Below are positions 23,684 through 32,541 of a DNA stretch of 64,000 nucleotides, piece by piece. The stretch comes from Salpingoeca rosetta (lineage: Eukaryota > Protista > Choanoflagellata): positions 194,451 through 258,450 of the forward strand of contig JAWQFM010000012.1 of NCBI GenBank assembly GCA_033442325.1, written 5' to 3'. Position 1 is the first letter of the stretch. Every line of letters begins with the position of its first letter. Under the pieces are notes generated by a model. The model saw nothing but the letters and a program-made list of their open reading frames with translations. It did not search any database and was not told the DNA's origin. The position numbers were made by a program, and so were the translations under genes.

Positions 23684-26600
23684 ATGTCCACCGTGACCAT
23701 CTCCAGCCCTCACGCTCTGAGAGGCAAGGATGACAACAGTGCTGTCATCACCCGCAAGGTGCAGCCCGAGCAGCTGCCACAACAAGCAAACCCTGCTGCC
23801 AACGACGAGGTGCACGCACCACTGCCACCACCTGCATCATCACAGCCGCACAGGCTGCAGCCGATGCAGCTTGCCGATACCCCGCCCCGTCTCTTGGGCA
23901 TGTCGCGCCGTCTCATCTCCATGTCCTGGCAGTCCTGGGAGGAAGCCACCATCCACGTTGCCGTCCCTTCCTCCAACGCGGTGAGGGTGTGTGTGGCGGC
24001 GCGTGCGTTGGGATAGGGGGTGAAGGAGAGTTACAAAAGGATTCGGAGTGAAGCCAAAGATGGGTGCTAAGAGCTGAGAGGAGGTGAAGCGGAAGGGGAG
24101 GGGGCGTGGAGGGGAAGAGGGTGTAGCAGCATCGACAAAGGCTTCACGGGAGCTGTCCATGACAGCGCTGCTTTGTACGTCTATGTCCTGTGTCGCTCAC
24201 TCTCCCTCCCTTCATGTCATTCATATAATGATGATGACGATGATGCGTGCGTTGTAGTCGTTGCCATTTCCGGCCACCATCAAACGTCTTCACGCCAGCA
24301 ACTCGGCCAACACCGACGCCATGAAAGCCGCCCTCGAGGACGTGCGTGCTGTGTTATGTGTGTATTGTGTGTGTGTGTGTGTCGTGTGTGTCGTGTGTGT
24401 CGTGTGTGTGTGTGTGTGTGTTGTGTACTGTGTTGTGTTTTTGTGTGTGTATTGTTGTGTGTTTTGTGTATTGTGTGTGTGTGTGTTGTGTGCTTGTTGT
24501 TCCTGATTTGGAGTACCTGCATCCCTCAACTTCTCACGGATTACACAACACGTACTGCACATGCACACCCACACACACACACACACACACACACACACAT
24601 CAATCAGGAGGCGCGCGTGCTGTCGGGATTGAGACACAAGCACGTGCTCTCTGTCGGCGGCATCTCCGCCATTGGGGACGAGCAGTGTCTCCTCTCCGAA
24701 CCCATCATCGGGTACGCATTGCATTGCACGTCATCATGACAACATACAGGTGCACCTGCACAAAAGTCCTCACACACACACACACACACACACACACACA
24801 CACACACACACACACACACCCATCCACACCCATCCACACACACACACACACACACTCACACACACACTCACACACACGCAGGAACTTGAAGGAACGACTG
24901 CTGCACAAACCGCAGCACACGACGTGGCTCATCACCGCCGCATTCGAGCTTGCATCTGGCCTCTCCTACCTGCACAGGTAAACAGCACTTACAACCATCA
25001 CACGTCCATGTTTCTTCCCGCGCTCGTGCACGCACTCTGTGCCTGAACACTGTCATTGAACCACAATCACTTCCGCCACAAACAACCTCAACCCCCCACC
25101 CACCAACATCACCACCACCATCATCACCACCACCACCACCATCACCTCATGAACGCCCTTACCCCCTTCCCCGCCCTCTCCCCCTCTCGGCCTGACAGGA
25201 GCGGCATCCAGCACTGGGACGTGAGCACGCGGAACGTCTTCCTTGCCGCCAACCACATGTGTCGCATCGGTAACATGTGCCTGCGTGACCACACTGTGCA
25301 CCACGCCGATGCTGGGTACTACACCCCAGCATGGAACCCCAGCGCCAAGGAGTTGCGGTGGTGGGCGCCAGAGGAACGCGACACGACCACCACGGCCACT
25401 GTAGTCCACCAATATCATCGTGACTGCGATGGCGGCGATTGCAGCCTGGCTGTTGATCTCTGGTGCTTTGGGTTCTGCCTGTACGAACTCTTCTCCGCAG
25501 GTAACGATGAAAATATGATGTCTTTGTTGTGGTTGTTGTTGTTGTTGTTGTTGTTGTTGTTGTGGCCTGGGTGCATTGTGGGGTGTTTTCTTGTTTCTTT
25601 CTTGTGAAGCAAACGAGCAATGAAGTTCAGCCTACCGTCGCAGACGCCAGAGCACACTGTCATACGCGTCACTCGCGCGTCACTCACGCGTCACTCACGC
25701 CATTGTTCACGTCACTTCATCACCATGACCGCCACCAACAGGTGCTGTCCCCTTTGTCGAGTCCACGTGGACCGATGCAGACGTGTACACGCAGACGATG
25801 CGTGAAATCCAACAGGGCGCCGTCCTGCCCCAGGTGACGCCACCGGCTGCTCGGTGTATGTGTGTGTGTGAGAGCGTGTGAGAGAGAGTGTGTGTGTGCG
25901 TGTGAGTGTTTGTGAGTGTGTGAGTGTGTGAGTGTGCGAGTGTGTGTGCATGTAGGTGTGCTTGTCTGTCCATCTCTGTGTCAGCTGCGTTGTTCTGATT
26001 GTCGGGTTGTTTTGACGTCTGGCTTGCTGTACGCACTTTGAATGACTCCGCTCACTGTACAATCGGGTTGTCTCTCCCCTTCTTGTTTCTCCTCTGTCCA
26101 CGCAGCCGAGCATGTGCCCCAACACCATCTACCAGCTGATGCTTGCATGCTGGAGCCTTGATCCAGCCCACCGACCAAAGGCAAACGTATGCGGCCGTGG
26201 GTGTGAATGTCGCGTTCATGCGTCTCGTGAGTGTGCCGACGCATATGTGTGCATGTGTGTGTGTGTGTGGATGCGTGTGGTTGCTTGCGTGCGTGTGTTT
26301 GAGCTACCATCCTCACACACACACACACACACACACACACACACACACAAACAAACACACACAAACAAACACACACACAGGAGCTGGTGCGTCTGATGGA
26401 GGACGTGGATGATCCGGCGGAGAAGATCCAATCGCTGCAGGAAGAAAACTCCGCTCTCCGCGAACAGGTGTGACCATTTCCAAATGTGTGTGTGTGTGGG
26501 GGGGGGGCGGAAGGAGAAGGAGGGGCAGTGTGCGTGTGTGTGCATGCAGTGGATGAGTTGTGTGTGTGTGTGAGTGTGTGTGTGAAGTACTTGGTGTGAA

Positions 26601-29600: not shown

Positions 29601-32541
29601 TCCTCCGCCGCGCCCGCAGTGTTGAGGCCGCTGCAAAGTCAAAGATCGTAAGCTATTTGCTTTGTGCGTGTGCTTGTGTGTGCGTTGTGTGTGCGTGTGT
29701 GTGTTGTGTGTGTGCGTGTGCGTTGTGTGTGGACGCCAGTACTTGTGTGTGTGCGTCGTTGTGACGACTGTGTTGTATGATGTCTTTGACATCTCATCAC
29801 GCATCACTATATGCGTCCATTCTCAACTTCCACCACTTGTGCAGGCATGCCTGAAGGCCGAGATGCAGAACACGGGCACCAACCAAGAGGTGTGTGCGCT
29901 CTGTCGTGAAGTACACACATGCACAGAGAAACAGCACAGCACAGCACAGCACAGACAGACAGACAGACAGACAGACAGACAGACAGACAGACAGACAGAC
30001 AGACAGACAGACAGACAGATAGACAGACAGACAGACAGACAGACAGACAGACAGACAGATAGACAAACAGACACACGCACACACACGCACACGCACACAC
30101 ACACACACACACGCACACGCACACACACACACACACACACACTAACCACCACTCTTCACTCATGTCCACAGAAGCAGCACATGCTGGCTGTCCTGCACGA
30201 GGATCTGCTGCGGGCGAAACAGGAGACGTGCGAGGGGCGGCTCGAGCGCATCCACCACCAAGTCTTCGAGTGCCGCGACCGTATTCAAAGCAAGCCCGTC
30301 AACAAGTCCGAACACAAGCAGGTGCGTGGCTTGCCTGACAAATGAAATGACACTCGATTCAATGATACTTGAAACGATGATACTTGCATGCGCCTGCTGT
30401 GTGTCCAATAATGGACAGGTGCTCTCAGTCATGCCCGTACGCATGCATCGTCTTCATTATCTTCATCCCTCACATGTCAAAACACAAACACATTCATGTT
30501 CATACGTTTGTATTTTCATTGAAATCAGCTGAAACTGATGCTGGAGCAACTGCACAAGAAGGAGCAAGCGTTGACCACCAAGCTGGCGTCATACAACGAG
30601 AAGCTGGTGGATGCAGAGGAAACGAGCAACAGCACAGCGCCAAAACCACGCGATGACGCCGAGGCCAGCGCGAACAAGACAGACCAACAGCAGCAACAGC
30701 AGCAACAGCAGCAACAGTGCATGCCACTCCACAACGGTCCGCTGCTCGCACAGCACAGGACACTCGGCACCTGTCGCCCACCATCACGCCAGAAGGGCTT
30801 AGCACCGCCGCCGCCACCACCACCTCCACCTCCACCGCCACCAGCGGCTGCACCATCATCACCATCAGCAATGACGAAGCAGCAGAAGCGCAAGGAATCG
30901 AAGAAGGAGAAGAAGGCGCTGAAGGAAGCGAAGAAGGAGGAGAAACGCAGGGCAAAGGAGGAAAAGGCCGCCATGAAGAAGGAGAGGAAGCGAACAAAGT
31001 CCTCCCCAAACAAGAACAAGAAGCAGCAGGAACAGCAAAAAGACCAGGAACAACAGGAAGTGGATGTTCCACAGCAAGAACAGCAGCAGCTTGATGACAG
31101 CCCAAGCACACGCACCAGCAAGAAGAGCAAGAAGAGCACCAAGAAGAGCAAGAAGTCCAAGAAAGGTGTCACCTTTGACCTTCCTTCCTCCACTTCATCC
31201 AACATTCCACCTCCACCACCGCCCCCTCCACTGCCGCCAACACAGGCGACCGCCTCGGCAACACCATCCCCACCACCCAGCAAGTCAACAACAAAGCCCA
31301 ACAAGGCTGCCAAGACCACAGCACCCTCTTCTGCACCACCACCACCACCACCGCCACCACCGCCGCCACCGCCACCATCGACAGCTGGTGCCTCGGCTGG
31401 GACAATGAAGCTCGCACCAACCAAGCGGCCAACCTCATCTCCATCGCGGCCCACGCACACCCGCAACCTGTCCTCGTCATCCCGACCACAGTCCATCGTC
31501 ATGGCAGATGCAGGCAGCAACAGCAACAGCAACAGCGGCAGTGCGTTTGGCGGCGGTGATTTGATGGCGGAGTTGTCTGCTGCAACGGCCAAGCGGGCAC
31601 GGGCGCGGCGTGAGAGCATGTTCCCTCGTCGCAACGAGAATCAGGTGGCAGCTGCACGCGACAACGCCGTTCGCCGCCTCAGCCGCATCACCCCGTCGCG
31701 CGTCCAGCGCGCAGCACAGCGCAGGCTCAGCCGTCTGCCCCAACACCGTCGCCAGCGAAGCGGTGCTGGTAACACAGCAACAGCAGCAGCAGCAGGGGCA
31801 GCAGCCAACCAGCACCAGCAGCATGAGCAGCAGGGCAACGGCACTACCAAGGGCAGCCTCACTGCCGTTGAGGAGGAAGCCACCACCAGTCAAGTGGAAG
31901 ATGCAGCCAGGTCAACGGATGCAAGTGGTGATGGCGGTGTGTGGAGAGAGGCAATGCTGTCTGCTGTGCGCGGGTTCCAGCAGAATTCGCTGCGACGTGT
32001 GGAGCACCGGCCCTCGATGGCGCGCCAGAAGAAGAAGACTCAGCTCGCACGAGCTCCCTCCGCACTTGGTCAGTTCACGTCACGTCAAGCTGCTGTTGAG
32101 TTGTTTGGAAAGGGGGGGGGGGAGAATAGTCTATTTGGGCAAGGGGATGGAGGAGGTGGATTCGCCACAAGCATTGTGTGTTGGTATCGTTGCACTCACA
32201 CTCACGGCTGTTGTCGCTTTTTTCACATTCCATGTCTGCAGGCGCTGTTGTTGACGACGCTCTGGCTCGAATTCGCGTCCACACAAACTTGGTGAGCACA
32301 TCTAGATGATGATGATGATGATGATGATGTTGTTGTTGTTTAAGTTGTTTAAGTTGTTTAAGTTGTTGTTGTTGTTGTTGTTGTTGTTGATCTTGGGTGG
32401 TTGGGGGCCGCCAGCGACGCGCGTGCTGCTTCAGGTTCTCACAATCGCCGGTGCGTTTACATGTGTGCGTCGTCACAGGAGTCATCTGATGATGACAGCG
32501 ACGGCTGGTCGGACGACAGCGGCGACGACGAACTGCTCTGA
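23684..32541 (+). CDS. Tyrosine pseudokinase fused to JMY/WHAMM-like coiled coil, polyproline region and WCA (WH2-C-A) module, about 1516 aa, 20 exons
   Basis: Exons: 23684-23980, 24258-24341, 24608-24711, 24882-24977, 25199-25500, 25742-25833, 26106-26186, 26381-26467, 26677-26946, 27203-27250, 27474-27923, 28126-28560, 28815-28934, 29208-29318, 29522-29647, 29845-29889, 30172-30321, 30529-32068, 32242-32291, 32479-32541. All introns are GT-AG and phase-compatible, totalling 4551 nt. TK motifs: ASGLSYLH, HWDVSTRN, RWWAPE, DLWCFG, MLACWSLDPAHRP. C-terminus: REAMLSAVRGFQQNSLRRV ... VVDDALARIRVHTNL ESSDDDSDGWSDDSGDDELL*. Confidence 0.8.
29952..30072. repeat. (GACA)n microsatellite, intronic
   Basis: About 30 units in intron 29890-30171. 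Confidence 0.95.

What the first reader, a model, noticed from the sequence alone, without database searches (positions are those of the whole stretch)
23684..32541. Candidate pre-animal WHAMM/JMY-type Arp2/3 nucleation-promoting factor fused to a tyrosine pseudokinase
Seen: 20 GT-AG exons join in phase into one ORF of about 1516 aa. The order is TK-like domain, acidic linker, helical region, Lys-rich basic region with three polyproline tracts, WH2 (REAMLSAVRGFQQNSLRRV; possibly a second, GDLMAELSAATAKR), central helix (VVDDALARIR) and acidic tail with Trp (ESSDDDSDGWSDDSGDDELL*). Established knowledge, recalled from memory: WH2-C-A(W) defines WASP-family Arp2/3 activators. The C helix resembles JMY/WHAMM (SIHEALRRIK / SIKAALQRIK). 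The middle region FLEAVYVYEDQIVVNMMRVEARLLAVQLQPFQAELEMA...QLTEDVLTWEQ aligns by eye with the JMY coiled coil LLDLYQMEDEAYSSLAEATTELYQYLLQPFRDMRELA...LQKEDADWQR. WHAMM/JMY have generally been regarded as metazoan-specific, and I know of none carrying a kinase fold. Inference: a non-animal WHAMM/JMY relative in which a pseudokinase replaces the N-terminal targeting domain, coupling phosphotyrosine-type signalling to actin branching. The C and A elements sit on two tiny exons (50 and 63 nt) that the ORF track misses, so the module is easy to overlook.
Basis: partly seen in the sequence, partly recalled or inferred. Interest (0 to 1): 0.93.

Follow-up and report, generated by a model that had tools for sequence, protein, structure and literature searches.

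The report
Pseudokinase fused to actin-branching tail
A single-celled relative of animals has one spliced gene that joins a dead-looking tyrosine-kinase domain to the kind of tail that switches on Arp2/3 actin branching. This is a new domain combination, but its proposed kinship with the animal proteins WHAMM and JMY found no support.

Summary
It joins in frame. RNA contigs splice exon 8 through exon 18 into one molecule and use the small C exon. One correction: exon 11 ends at 27917, not 27923, so the protein is 1514 aa.

The N-terminus is a tyrosine-kinase-like domain (Pfam and PDB). It has no glycine loop, HRD is HWD and DFG is NMC, so it is probably a pseudokinase.

The tail reads polyproline, WH2-like motif, amphipathic helix, acidic Trp end. 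The Pfam WH2 profile misses the WH2. A complex prediction with this genome's own actin places it in the canonical WH2 site (score 0.90, best control 0.02).

A second, AT-rich organism keeps the same order, from kinase end to polyproline, on one contig.

Nothing supports WHAMM/JMY membership. Neither Pfam family matched, phmmer against 1.84 billion proteins found only that one orthologue, and the by-eye alignment is marginal.

Best reading: a lineage-restricted WCA-type nucleation-promoting factor with a new pseudokinase head. Arp2/3 activation is untested. The scan had not noted this gene before; it had noted another WCA fusion elsewhere in this genome (s1-433359).

The parts
23684..32541 (+). 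Whole coding region.
   Evidence: model rebuilt, all phases fit. (spliced RNA contigs).
23939..26186 (+). Tyrosine-kinase-like domain (about aa 86-352) spread over exons 1-7. The beta3 Lys (ATIK) and the alphaC Glu are kept. There is no GxGxxG loop.
   Evidence: PF07714 on exon 5 (profile positions 124-199) and exon 7 (226-250), collinear. Motifs read from the translation.
25199..25500 (+). Exon 5, holding the catalytic loop and activation segment. HRD reads HWD, DFG reads NMC, a tandem YY is kept in the activation loop, and a 19-residue insert follows APE.
   Evidence: phmmer alignment to the JAK2 kinase domain. Best PDB hits are JAK2, Venus kinase receptor and FAK.
26381..26700 (+). Short leucine-zipper-like coiled coil straight after the kinase (exon 8 and the start of exon 9). 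Its a/d positions read I-L-N-L-L-L.
   Evidence: Sequence. Weak Pfam TSC22 zipper hit, E 0.044. The start of the exon is conserved in L001. Dimerisation is inference.
26701..28314 (+). Acidic, Ser/Thr-rich, low-complexity linker (exons 9-12). It contains a conserved GEKFGFGDY motif at 27474-27521. The true exon 11 donor is at 27917.
   Evidence: 59 Asp/Glu against 17 Lys/Arg. (motif kept in L001 at 1368-1415). (27917|28126 junction in two runs).
28315..30630 (+). Helical region of about 300 aa, from the exon 12 block to the start of exon 18. Blocks in exons 12, 14, 15 and 17 are 49-53% identical in a second organism.
   Evidence: tblastn to L001. (64-residue helix, pLDDT 88). Searches found no known family.
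30679..30843 (+). PolyGln followed by the first polyproline run (13 Pro).
30871..31170 (+). Lys/Glu/Arg-rich basic stretch (37 Lys/Arg in 100 aa). A similar stretch exists in L001.
31207..31377 (+). Second and third polyproline runs (8 and 14 Pro).
31558..31770 (+). Arg-rich stretch with one RRES and two RRLS sites that fit basophilic-kinase consensus.
   Evidence: motif scan. (no Pfam WH2 on 31543-31662).
31942..32001 (+). WH2-like motif: an amphipathic helix (WREAMLSAVRGF) followed by LRRV.
   Evidence: with this genome's actin, score 0.90 against a best control of 0.02. The helix contacts actin 144-149 and 342-356, and LRRV contacts actin 24-26. The Pfam WH2 profile does not hit it.
32242..32291 (+). 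Exon 19 (50 nt): candidate C (connector) helix, VVDDALARIRVHTNL.
   Evidence: the 32068|32242 junction is in an X5 contig and two X21 reads, and the aligned side is exactly 50 nt.
32479..32541 (+). Exon 20 (63 nt with the stop): acidic tail with one Trp (DDDSDGWSDD...).
   Evidence: The same form, Trp followed by an acidic run up to the stop, is seen in other WH2 genes of this genome. The 32291|32479 junction is implied, not shown.

Best explanation
This is one gene for a multidomain protein of about 1514 aa. I read it as a lineage-restricted, WASP-family-type (class I, WCA) nucleation-promoting factor for the Arp2/3 complex. Its family-specific head is a tyrosine-kinase-like pseudokinase.

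Proposed mechanism:
- The polyproline runs recruit profilin-actin and SH3 partners (inferred).
- The WH2-like helix and its LRRV motif hold an actin monomer in the cleft between subdomains 1 and 3 (supported in silico).
- The short amphipathic C helix and the acidic Trp tail engage Arp2/3 (inferred from motif grammar only).
- The pseudokinase cannot phosphorylate, because it has no glycine loop and DFG reads NMC. It probably acts as a docking or regulatory module (inferred).
- The zipper after the kinase may dimerise the protein, which in known WCA proteins raises potency (inferred).
- The 300-aa helical region is a conserved partner-binding or autoinhibitory part of unknown family.

The protein works like WASP, WAVE, WASH, WHAMM and JMY, but it is not shown to belong to any of those subfamilies.
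For: - Gene model and in-frame splicing.
- One spliced RNA contig covers the end of exon 8 through exon 18, and the C-exon junction is used.
- Kinase fold: PF07714 on exons 5 and 7. The nearest solved kinases are JAK2, FAK and VKR, with HWD and NMC at the catalytic positions.
- WH2: complex prediction with own-genome actin (L021) scores 0.90 against a best control of 0.02. The three runs agree in at least 54% of contacts and partner pLDDT is at least 56. That mark was reached by 51 of 78 solved complexes and 2 of 108 mismatched pairs. The contacts are the canonical WH2 and LKKV sites.
- Other WH2 genes of this genome also carry C and A on separate small exons, with Trp followed by an acidic run.
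- ARPC2 and actin are encoded in this genome.
- The order kinase end, zipper start, GEKFGFGDY motif, helical blocks, basic stretch, polyproline is kept on one strand of a contig from a 38% GC organism.
Against: - The Pfam WH2 profile does not detect the WH2, although it finds 12 others in the genome. PDB sequences show no WH2 similarity either.
- The complex score shows likeness to solved WH2-actin complexes, not binding.
- C and A are 16 and 20 residues long and rest on pattern only.
- The Trp lies 12 residues from the end, further than in most animal factors.
- The orthologue contig stops in polyproline, so conservation of WH2, C and A is unknown.
- Some RNA contigs keep introns 18 and 19, which would remove C and A. 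An antisense RNA also covers this end.
Confidence: 0.6

Rival explanations
1. One reading: a true pre-animal homologue of WHAMM/JMY. The helical region is the WHAMM/JMY coiled coil and a pseudokinase has replaced the N-terminal WMD.
For: - The overall order is the same: long helical region, polyproline, WH2, C, acidic Trp.
- The local ungapped match to the recalled JMY segment scores 42 (11 identities in 34), with shuffle P 0.004.
- The Pro inside the helix is kept in the orthologue.
Against: - There is no Pfam JMY or WHAMM-JMY_N match on any exon of either species, nor any significant one in the genome. The same method finds split ARPC2 exons.
- phmmer of exon 12 against 1.84 billion proteins, animals included, found no animal hit at E 0.001 or better.
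- The Atlas feature search is at chance level.
- The P value is uncorrected for picking the segment by eye. The match weakens in the orthologue (33, P 0.04; QPF becomes KPL).
Confidence: 0.13
2. An actin-monomer-binding pseudokinase scaffold that does not activate Arp2/3. The WH2 is real, but the C/A-like end is a chance or differently used acidic tail. The protein would then act like WH2-only factors that sequester, deliver or nucleate actin, as SPIRE does with its kinase-derived KIND domain and WH2 repeats.
For: - Only the WH2 has any test behind it.
- C and A are very short and lie beside low-complexity sequence.
- Intron-retaining RNA contigs would end the protein before the acidic tail.
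- SPIRE is a precedent for a kinase-fold module joined to WH2, and it exists in choanoflagellates (PMC11231147).
Against: - The order and spacing (WH2, about 24 residues, amphipathic helix with Arg, acidic run with Trp at the very C-terminus) is the full WCA grammar.
- It sits on dedicated exons, as in other WH2-C-A genes of this genome.
- There are no KIND, SPIRE-box or FYVE hits.
Confidence: 0.2
3. A gene-model artefact: two neighbouring genes, a kinase and a proline-rich protein, wrongly merged.
For: - The long low-complexity linker between the two halves could hide a gene boundary.
- A contig that spans two genes does not by itself prove one transcript.
Against: - One RNA contig is spliced, in frame and without a stop, across every junction from exon 8 to exon 18.
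- The same order occurs on one strand in a second organism.
Confidence: 0.03

Closest known systems
WHAMM / JMY (WHAMM family in the sense of Kollmar et al. 2012, PMC3298513)
   Same: A long helical middle followed by polyproline, WH2, a C helix of the ALxRI[KR] type and an acidic Trp end. The expected role as an Arp2/3 activator is the same.
   Different: There is no WMD (PF15920) and no detectable JMY coiled-coil profile (PF15871). The N-terminus is a kinase-like domain. Only one supported WH2 is present, against two or three. The organism is not an animal, and the family is regarded as metazoan-specific.
WASP, N-WASP, WAVE/SCAR and WASH (class I nucleation-promoting factors)
   Same: A C-terminal polyproline and WCA module. 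The subfamily-specific part lies N-terminal to it.
   Different: No WH1, GBD, SHD or WAHD1 domain was detected. The head is a pseudokinase followed by a zipper.
Lineage-specific WCA fusions: WAML, WAWH (PMC3298513), WHIMP (PMC7112243), and the PDZ-scaffold WCA gene noted in this same genome (s1-433359)
   Same: A WCA tail joined to an unrelated head, with a narrow taxonomic range. This shows that the WCA module is reused.
   Different: In none of them is the head a protein-kinase fold.
SPIRE (KIND plus WH2 repeats; present in choanoflagellates, PMC11231147)
   Same: A catalytically dead, kinase-derived module joined to WH2-based actin assembly.
   Different: KIND is only a kinase C-lobe, whereas this domain keeps both lobes. 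SPIRE has four WH2 repeats, a SPIRE-box and FYVE, and no C/A tail. None of these was found here.
JAK-type tyrosine kinases and their pseudokinase domains
   Same: They are the best solved matches to exon 5. The catalytic loop is of the HxDxxxRN tyrosine-kinase type, and the activation loop has a tandem YY.
   Different: There are no FERM or SH2 domains. HRD reads HWD, DFG reads NMC and the glycine loop is missing. Identity is low (23 bits over 95 residues).

Membership tests
WHAMM/JMY | N-terminal WMD (Pfam WHAMM-JMY_N, PF15920) | tested here: not met
   No hit on exons 2-11 at E up to 10. In the whole genome the only match is E 1.34, with stop codons, on another contig.
WHAMM/JMY | Central WHAMM/JMY coiled coil (Pfam JMY, PF15871) | tested here: not met
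   No hit on exons 12-18 of the window or on the L001 exons. The six-frame genome search gave no candidates, while the same method finds split ARPC2 exons. phmmer of exon 12 against 1.84 billion proteins found no animal protein. Caveat: the exons could only be tested one at a time, because the spliced protein has no reference to hand in.
WHAMM/JMY | Polyproline region followed by WH2, C and an acidic Trp tail | tested here: met
   Read directly from the translation and supported for the WH2. This feature is shared by all WASP-family proteins, so it does not separate WHAMM/JMY from the others.
WASP-family class I NPF (WCA module) | WH2 profile match (Pfam PF02205) | tested here: not met
   No hit on exon 18 or on a 40-aa piece around the motif. 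It is not among the 12 WH2 matches in the genome.
WASP-family class I NPF (WCA module) | WH2 helix and LKKV-type motif that dock on the actin cleft between subdomains 1 and 3 | tested here: met
   score 0.90 against a best control of 0.02. Contacts are with actin 24-29, 144-149, 168-169 and 342-356. This is in silico only and shows likeness, not binding.
WASP-family class I NPF (WCA module) | Amphipathic C helix with a conserved Arg, about 20 residues after the WH2 | tested here: inconclusive
   VVDDALARIRVHTNL lies 24 residues after LRRV. It is similar in form to the C helices of other WH2 genes in this genome. No statistical or structural test was possible on 16 residues.
WASP-family class I NPF (WCA module) | Acidic C-terminal tail containing Trp | tested here: met
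   The tail has 11 Asp/Glu in its last 20 residues and one Trp. The exon is reached by spliced RNA, with the junction implied.
WASP-family class I NPF (WCA module) | Activation of Arp2/3 nucleation | not testable with these tools
   This needs a pyrene-actin assay.
Protein kinase superfamily, tyrosine-kinase-like | Kinase fold profile | tested here: met
   PF07714 on exon 5 (33.4 bits) and exon 7 (24.1 bits), both above the 23.1-bit cut-off. Tyrosine kinases are the top PDB hits.
Protein kinase superfamily, tyrosine-kinase-like | Catalytic motifs (GxGxxG, HRD, DFG) | tested here: not met
   There is no glycine loop in the translation. The JAK2 alignment shows HWD for HRD and NMC for DFG. This makes it a predicted pseudokinase. 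Conservation of these changes in the orthologue could not be checked.
SPIRE | KIND domain, four WH2 repeats, SPIRE-box and FYVE | tested here: not met
   No such Pfam hits on any exon.

The most novel reading that the evidence does not exclude
The helical region is the ancestral WHAMM/JMY coiled coil, which would make this the first non-animal member of that family. Its pseudokinase head would show that an Arp2/3 activator was wired directly to tyrosine-kinase-type signalling before animals arose.
Probability: 0.13. Interest if true: 0.85.

Novelty: new variant of a known kind. Interest (0 to 1): 0.6.

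Why it matters
WASP-family proteins are classified by what sits in front of the WCA tail. That head decides where and when Arp2/3 builds branched actin. A full kinase-fold head has not been described, and my literature searches found none. The nearest case is SPIRE's KIND domain, which is a kinase C-lobe only.

If the tail is active, this protein adds a new input logic for branched-actin assembly. It would do so in the closest living relatives of animals, a group known for expanded tyrosine-kinase signalling and for actin-rich collars and feeding structures.

Together with the PDZ-scaffold WCA fusion noted elsewhere in this genome, it suggests that the WCA tail has been shuffled repeatedly onto new heads in this lineage.

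From its 55.4 Mb size, the genome appears to be Salpingoeca rosetta. That is my inference, because the organism's name is coded in the tools. The species has transfection and genome editing (PMC11231147 and references in it), so the idea can be tested.

Tried and rejected
- **Full spliced protein.** A whole-protein Pfam or HHpred-style scan, a whole-protein fold and a Foldseek comparison were therefore left out. All profile tests were made exon by exon.
- **JMY/WHAMM profiles.** PF15871 and PF15920 on the exons and on the whole genome gave nothing.
- **Atlas feature search of the exon-12 helix.** Best score 0.82, or 0.79 among named clusters; these are chance-level, plant NAM-associated clusters.
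- **PDB sequence search.** Exon 12 gave nothing. The WH2 piece gave only chance hits to galectin and TTLL6.
- **Orthologue's C-terminus and kinase exon.** The search for homologous proteins with 31543-32067 scored none of 2057 candidates at E up to 1. With exon 5 it found no candidate. Length limits may hide them.
- **Metagenome scan with the two-species exon-12 alignment.** 140 pattern matches, none confirmed.
- **Paralogues.** The genome holds no paralogue of exon 12; the best other match is E 0.0095.
- **Source organism of L001.** The run accession appears in no paper, and the protein cluster has one unnamed member.
- **Second WH2 candidate (GDLMAELSAATAKR).** No Pfam hit and it lacks an LKKV-type motif, so I rejected it as unsupported.
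They come from memory. I scored them only as a lead.
- **Folding the exon-12 block.** It gave one long helix. A fold search on a single helix would be meaningless, so I did not run one.

Full report
**Observation**

Twenty exons between 23684 and 32541 on the + strand all have GT donors and AG acceptors. They join in phase into 4551 nt, giving 1516 aa and ending at a TGA.

These are the WH2-like motif, the VVDDALARIR helix on a 50-nt exon (32242-32291), and the acidic Trp tail on a 63-nt exon (32479-32541). There are three polyproline runs of 13, 8 and 14 residues. A stretch with 37 Lys/Arg in 100 residues lies between the first and second runs.

**RNA evidence**

Only 6000 letters could be laid, and only once, so I chose 26600-32599. 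Low-complexity CAG/CAA stretches produce many false joints and loose ends there, but the long contig pieces are clear.

- A 3691-nt contig of run X4 aligns in order to 26668-26946, 27473-27914, 28123-28558, 30170-30318 and 30526-30679.
- The unaligned record intervals between those pieces are 47 nt, which fits exon 10 (48 nt, with one ambiguous base), and exactly 402 nt. Exons 13 to 16 are 120, 111, 126 and 45 nt, which sum to 402.
- The nine bases before exon 9 align with one mismatch because they are really the end of exon 8.
- A further 1751 nt of the contig run upstream. That is enough for the remaining 1134 nt of exons 1-8 plus about 600 nt more.
- So the kinase end and the helical region are on one spliced, in-frame molecule. 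Run X5 gives the same pieces.
- Both runs join 27914(+cag) to 28126.
- The 32068|32242 junction is present in an X5 contig and in two X21 raw reads of the sense orientation. The part after the joint is exactly 50 nt, which is exon 19. That implies the next splice at 32291, although that row was not shown.
- X4 also has unspliced pieces at 31386-32295 and 32400-32551.
- In both raw-read runs the first mate lies mostly on the + strand from 30400 to 32600, but mostly on the − strand from 26600 to 28600. An antisense RNA therefore probably overlaps the 3' end, and some sense transcripts may retain the last introns.

**The head**

Exon 5 and exon 7 each pass the Pfam cut-off for PK_Tyr_Ser-Thr, at collinear profile positions 124-199 and 226-250. 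The nearest solved chains to exon 5 are JAK2, a Venus kinase receptor and FAK, ahead of the activin receptors.

- In the JAK2 alignment HRDLATRN is matched by HWDVSTRN, and IGDFGL by IGNMCL. A tandem YY sits where JAK2 has its activation-loop tyrosines, and a 19-residue insert follows APE.
- The translation keeps a beta3-type ATIK and an alphaC-type Glu.
- There is no GxGxxG loop.
- I therefore agree that this is a tyrosine-kinase-like domain that should not catalyse phosphotransfer. This is an inference from motifs. It could not be checked in the orthologue.

Directly after the domain comes a short heptad stretch with I-L-N-L-L-L at the a/d positions. It gives a weak TSC22 zipper hit (E 0.044). 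It may dimerise the protein.

**The tail**

The Pfam WH2 profile does not see the candidate WH2. It misses it in the 513-aa exon, in a 40-aa piece and in the six-frame genome search, which finds 12 other WH2 motifs. PDB sequences show nothing either.

The spacing between the helix and LRRV is six residues. One accepted WH2 of this genome (in L006, LLSALRKFDKTGLKKV) has the same spacing.

I then asked for a complex of the 56-aa piece 31900-32067 with an intronless actin of the same genome (L021:1492-2619).

- The score was 0.90 in the median run, against 0.02 for the best of three controls.
- The runs agreed in at least 54% of contacts, and partner pLDDT was at least 56.
- That mark had been reached by 51 of 78 solved complexes and by 2 of 108 mismatched pairs.
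- The helix from W15 to F26 lies against actin 144-149, 168-169 and 342-356. L31-V34 lies against actin 24-26. This is the known WH2 binding mode.
- Because WH2-actin complexes are solved, the pass shows likeness rather than binding.

The C helix and the acidic tail are too short to test. Three other WH2 genes of this genome carry the same kind of end on separate small exons, for example a C helix followed by DDDWDDDDDDF-stop, or GGGEWDDDEDDDY-stop. A Trp followed by ten or so acidic residues is therefore the local norm. The genome encodes ARPC2 and Arp-like actins.

**Conservation**

phmmer of exon 12 against 1.84 billion representative proteins gave one hit only. It is a 156-aa exon-sized ORF at 43% identity from a 5785-nt contig of a public run (L001). 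That contig has 37.9% GC against about 55% here, so it comes from another organism, which I could not name.

tblastn of the spliced model against L001 finds the following in the same order on one strand:

| Part | Identity |
|---|---|
| kinase exon 7 | 65% |
| start of exon 8 (by eye) | not scored |
| exon 10 | 40% |
| GEKFGFGDY motif at the start of exon 11 | 62.5% over 16 aa |
| exon 12 | 53% |
| exon 13 | 47% |
| exon 14 | 50% |
| exon 15 | 49% |
| exon 17 | 53% |
| large exon with a basic Lys/Glu stretch, ending in polyproline at the contig edge | no tblastn hit (read from translation) |

The fusion of kinase and helical region is thus conserved. Whether WH2, C and A are conserved is unknown, because the contig ends first. 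No other relative was found in metagenome contigs, and no paralogue in the genome.

**WHAMM/JMY**

The literature does hold that this family is confined to animals (PMC3298513, restated in PMC5461030). I found no paper describing a choanoflagellate member or a kinase-WCA fusion.

- Neither Pfam family of WHAMM/JMY matches any exon of either species or any significant place in the genome.
- The method does detect 45-55-residue exons of ARPC2.
- The phmmer search would have listed animal JMY or WHAMM at E 0.001 or better, and did not.
- Atlas feature searches were at chance level.
It scores 42, with shuffle P 0.004. That figure ignores that the segment was picked by eye from a few hundred residues.
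- The match falls to 33 (P 0.04) in the orthologue, where LQPF reads LKPL.
- AlphaFold2 makes the block one long helix, which fits many families.

I rate true WHAMM/JMY kinship at about one in eight. The decisive profile-profile test on the spliced protein could not be run here.

**Verdict**

This is one conserved gene for a pseudokinase-headed protein with a WASP-family-type tail. It is best seen as a new, lineage-restricted variant of the class I nucleation-promoting factors, alongside the other WCA fusion already noted in this genome (s1-433359). It is not a demonstrated WHAMM/JMY relative. Arp2/3 activation, the role of the pseudokinase and dimerisation are all inferences.

Noticed in passing
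window 30400-32600, - strand: In both stranded raw-read RNA runs the first mate lies mostly on the + strand here, opposite to the orientation over 26600-28600. Contigs 31386-32295 and 32400-32551 are unspliced. This suggests an antisense transcript over the proline-rich/WCA end of the gene.
   Followed up: partly
window 27474-27521; L001 1368-1415: A short motif, GEKFGFGDY (GEKYGFGDY in the other organism), is conserved inside an otherwise unconserved acidic linker. Its function is unknown.
   Followed up: no
window 31500-31740: One RRES and two RRLS sites fit basophilic-kinase consensus. They lie in the Arg-rich stretch just upstream of the WH2 and could be regulatory phosphorylation sites.
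   Followed up: no
L003 (G000:C5:59618-62695), L006 (G000:C6:980530-983613), L008 (G000:C9:338064-341129): Other genes of this genome carry WH2 motifs and/or a C helix and acidic Trp tail on separate small exons. L006 has at least four WH2 repeats before a C helix and a DDEWD end.
   Followed up: partly
window about 33990-34090: An assembly gap (a run of N) lies inside a long repeat whose – strand translation reads SLTH, downstream of the gene.
   Followed up: no
window 29930-30060 and most introns of the gene: A long (GACA)n microsatellite sits in intron 16, and (CA)n/(GT)n runs occur in nearly every intron.
   Followed up: no
L001 (Logan contig of run SRR14727189): The only detectable orthologue comes from an unidentified organism with 37.9% GC. 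Several exon boundaries look shared with the window gene.
   Followed up: partly
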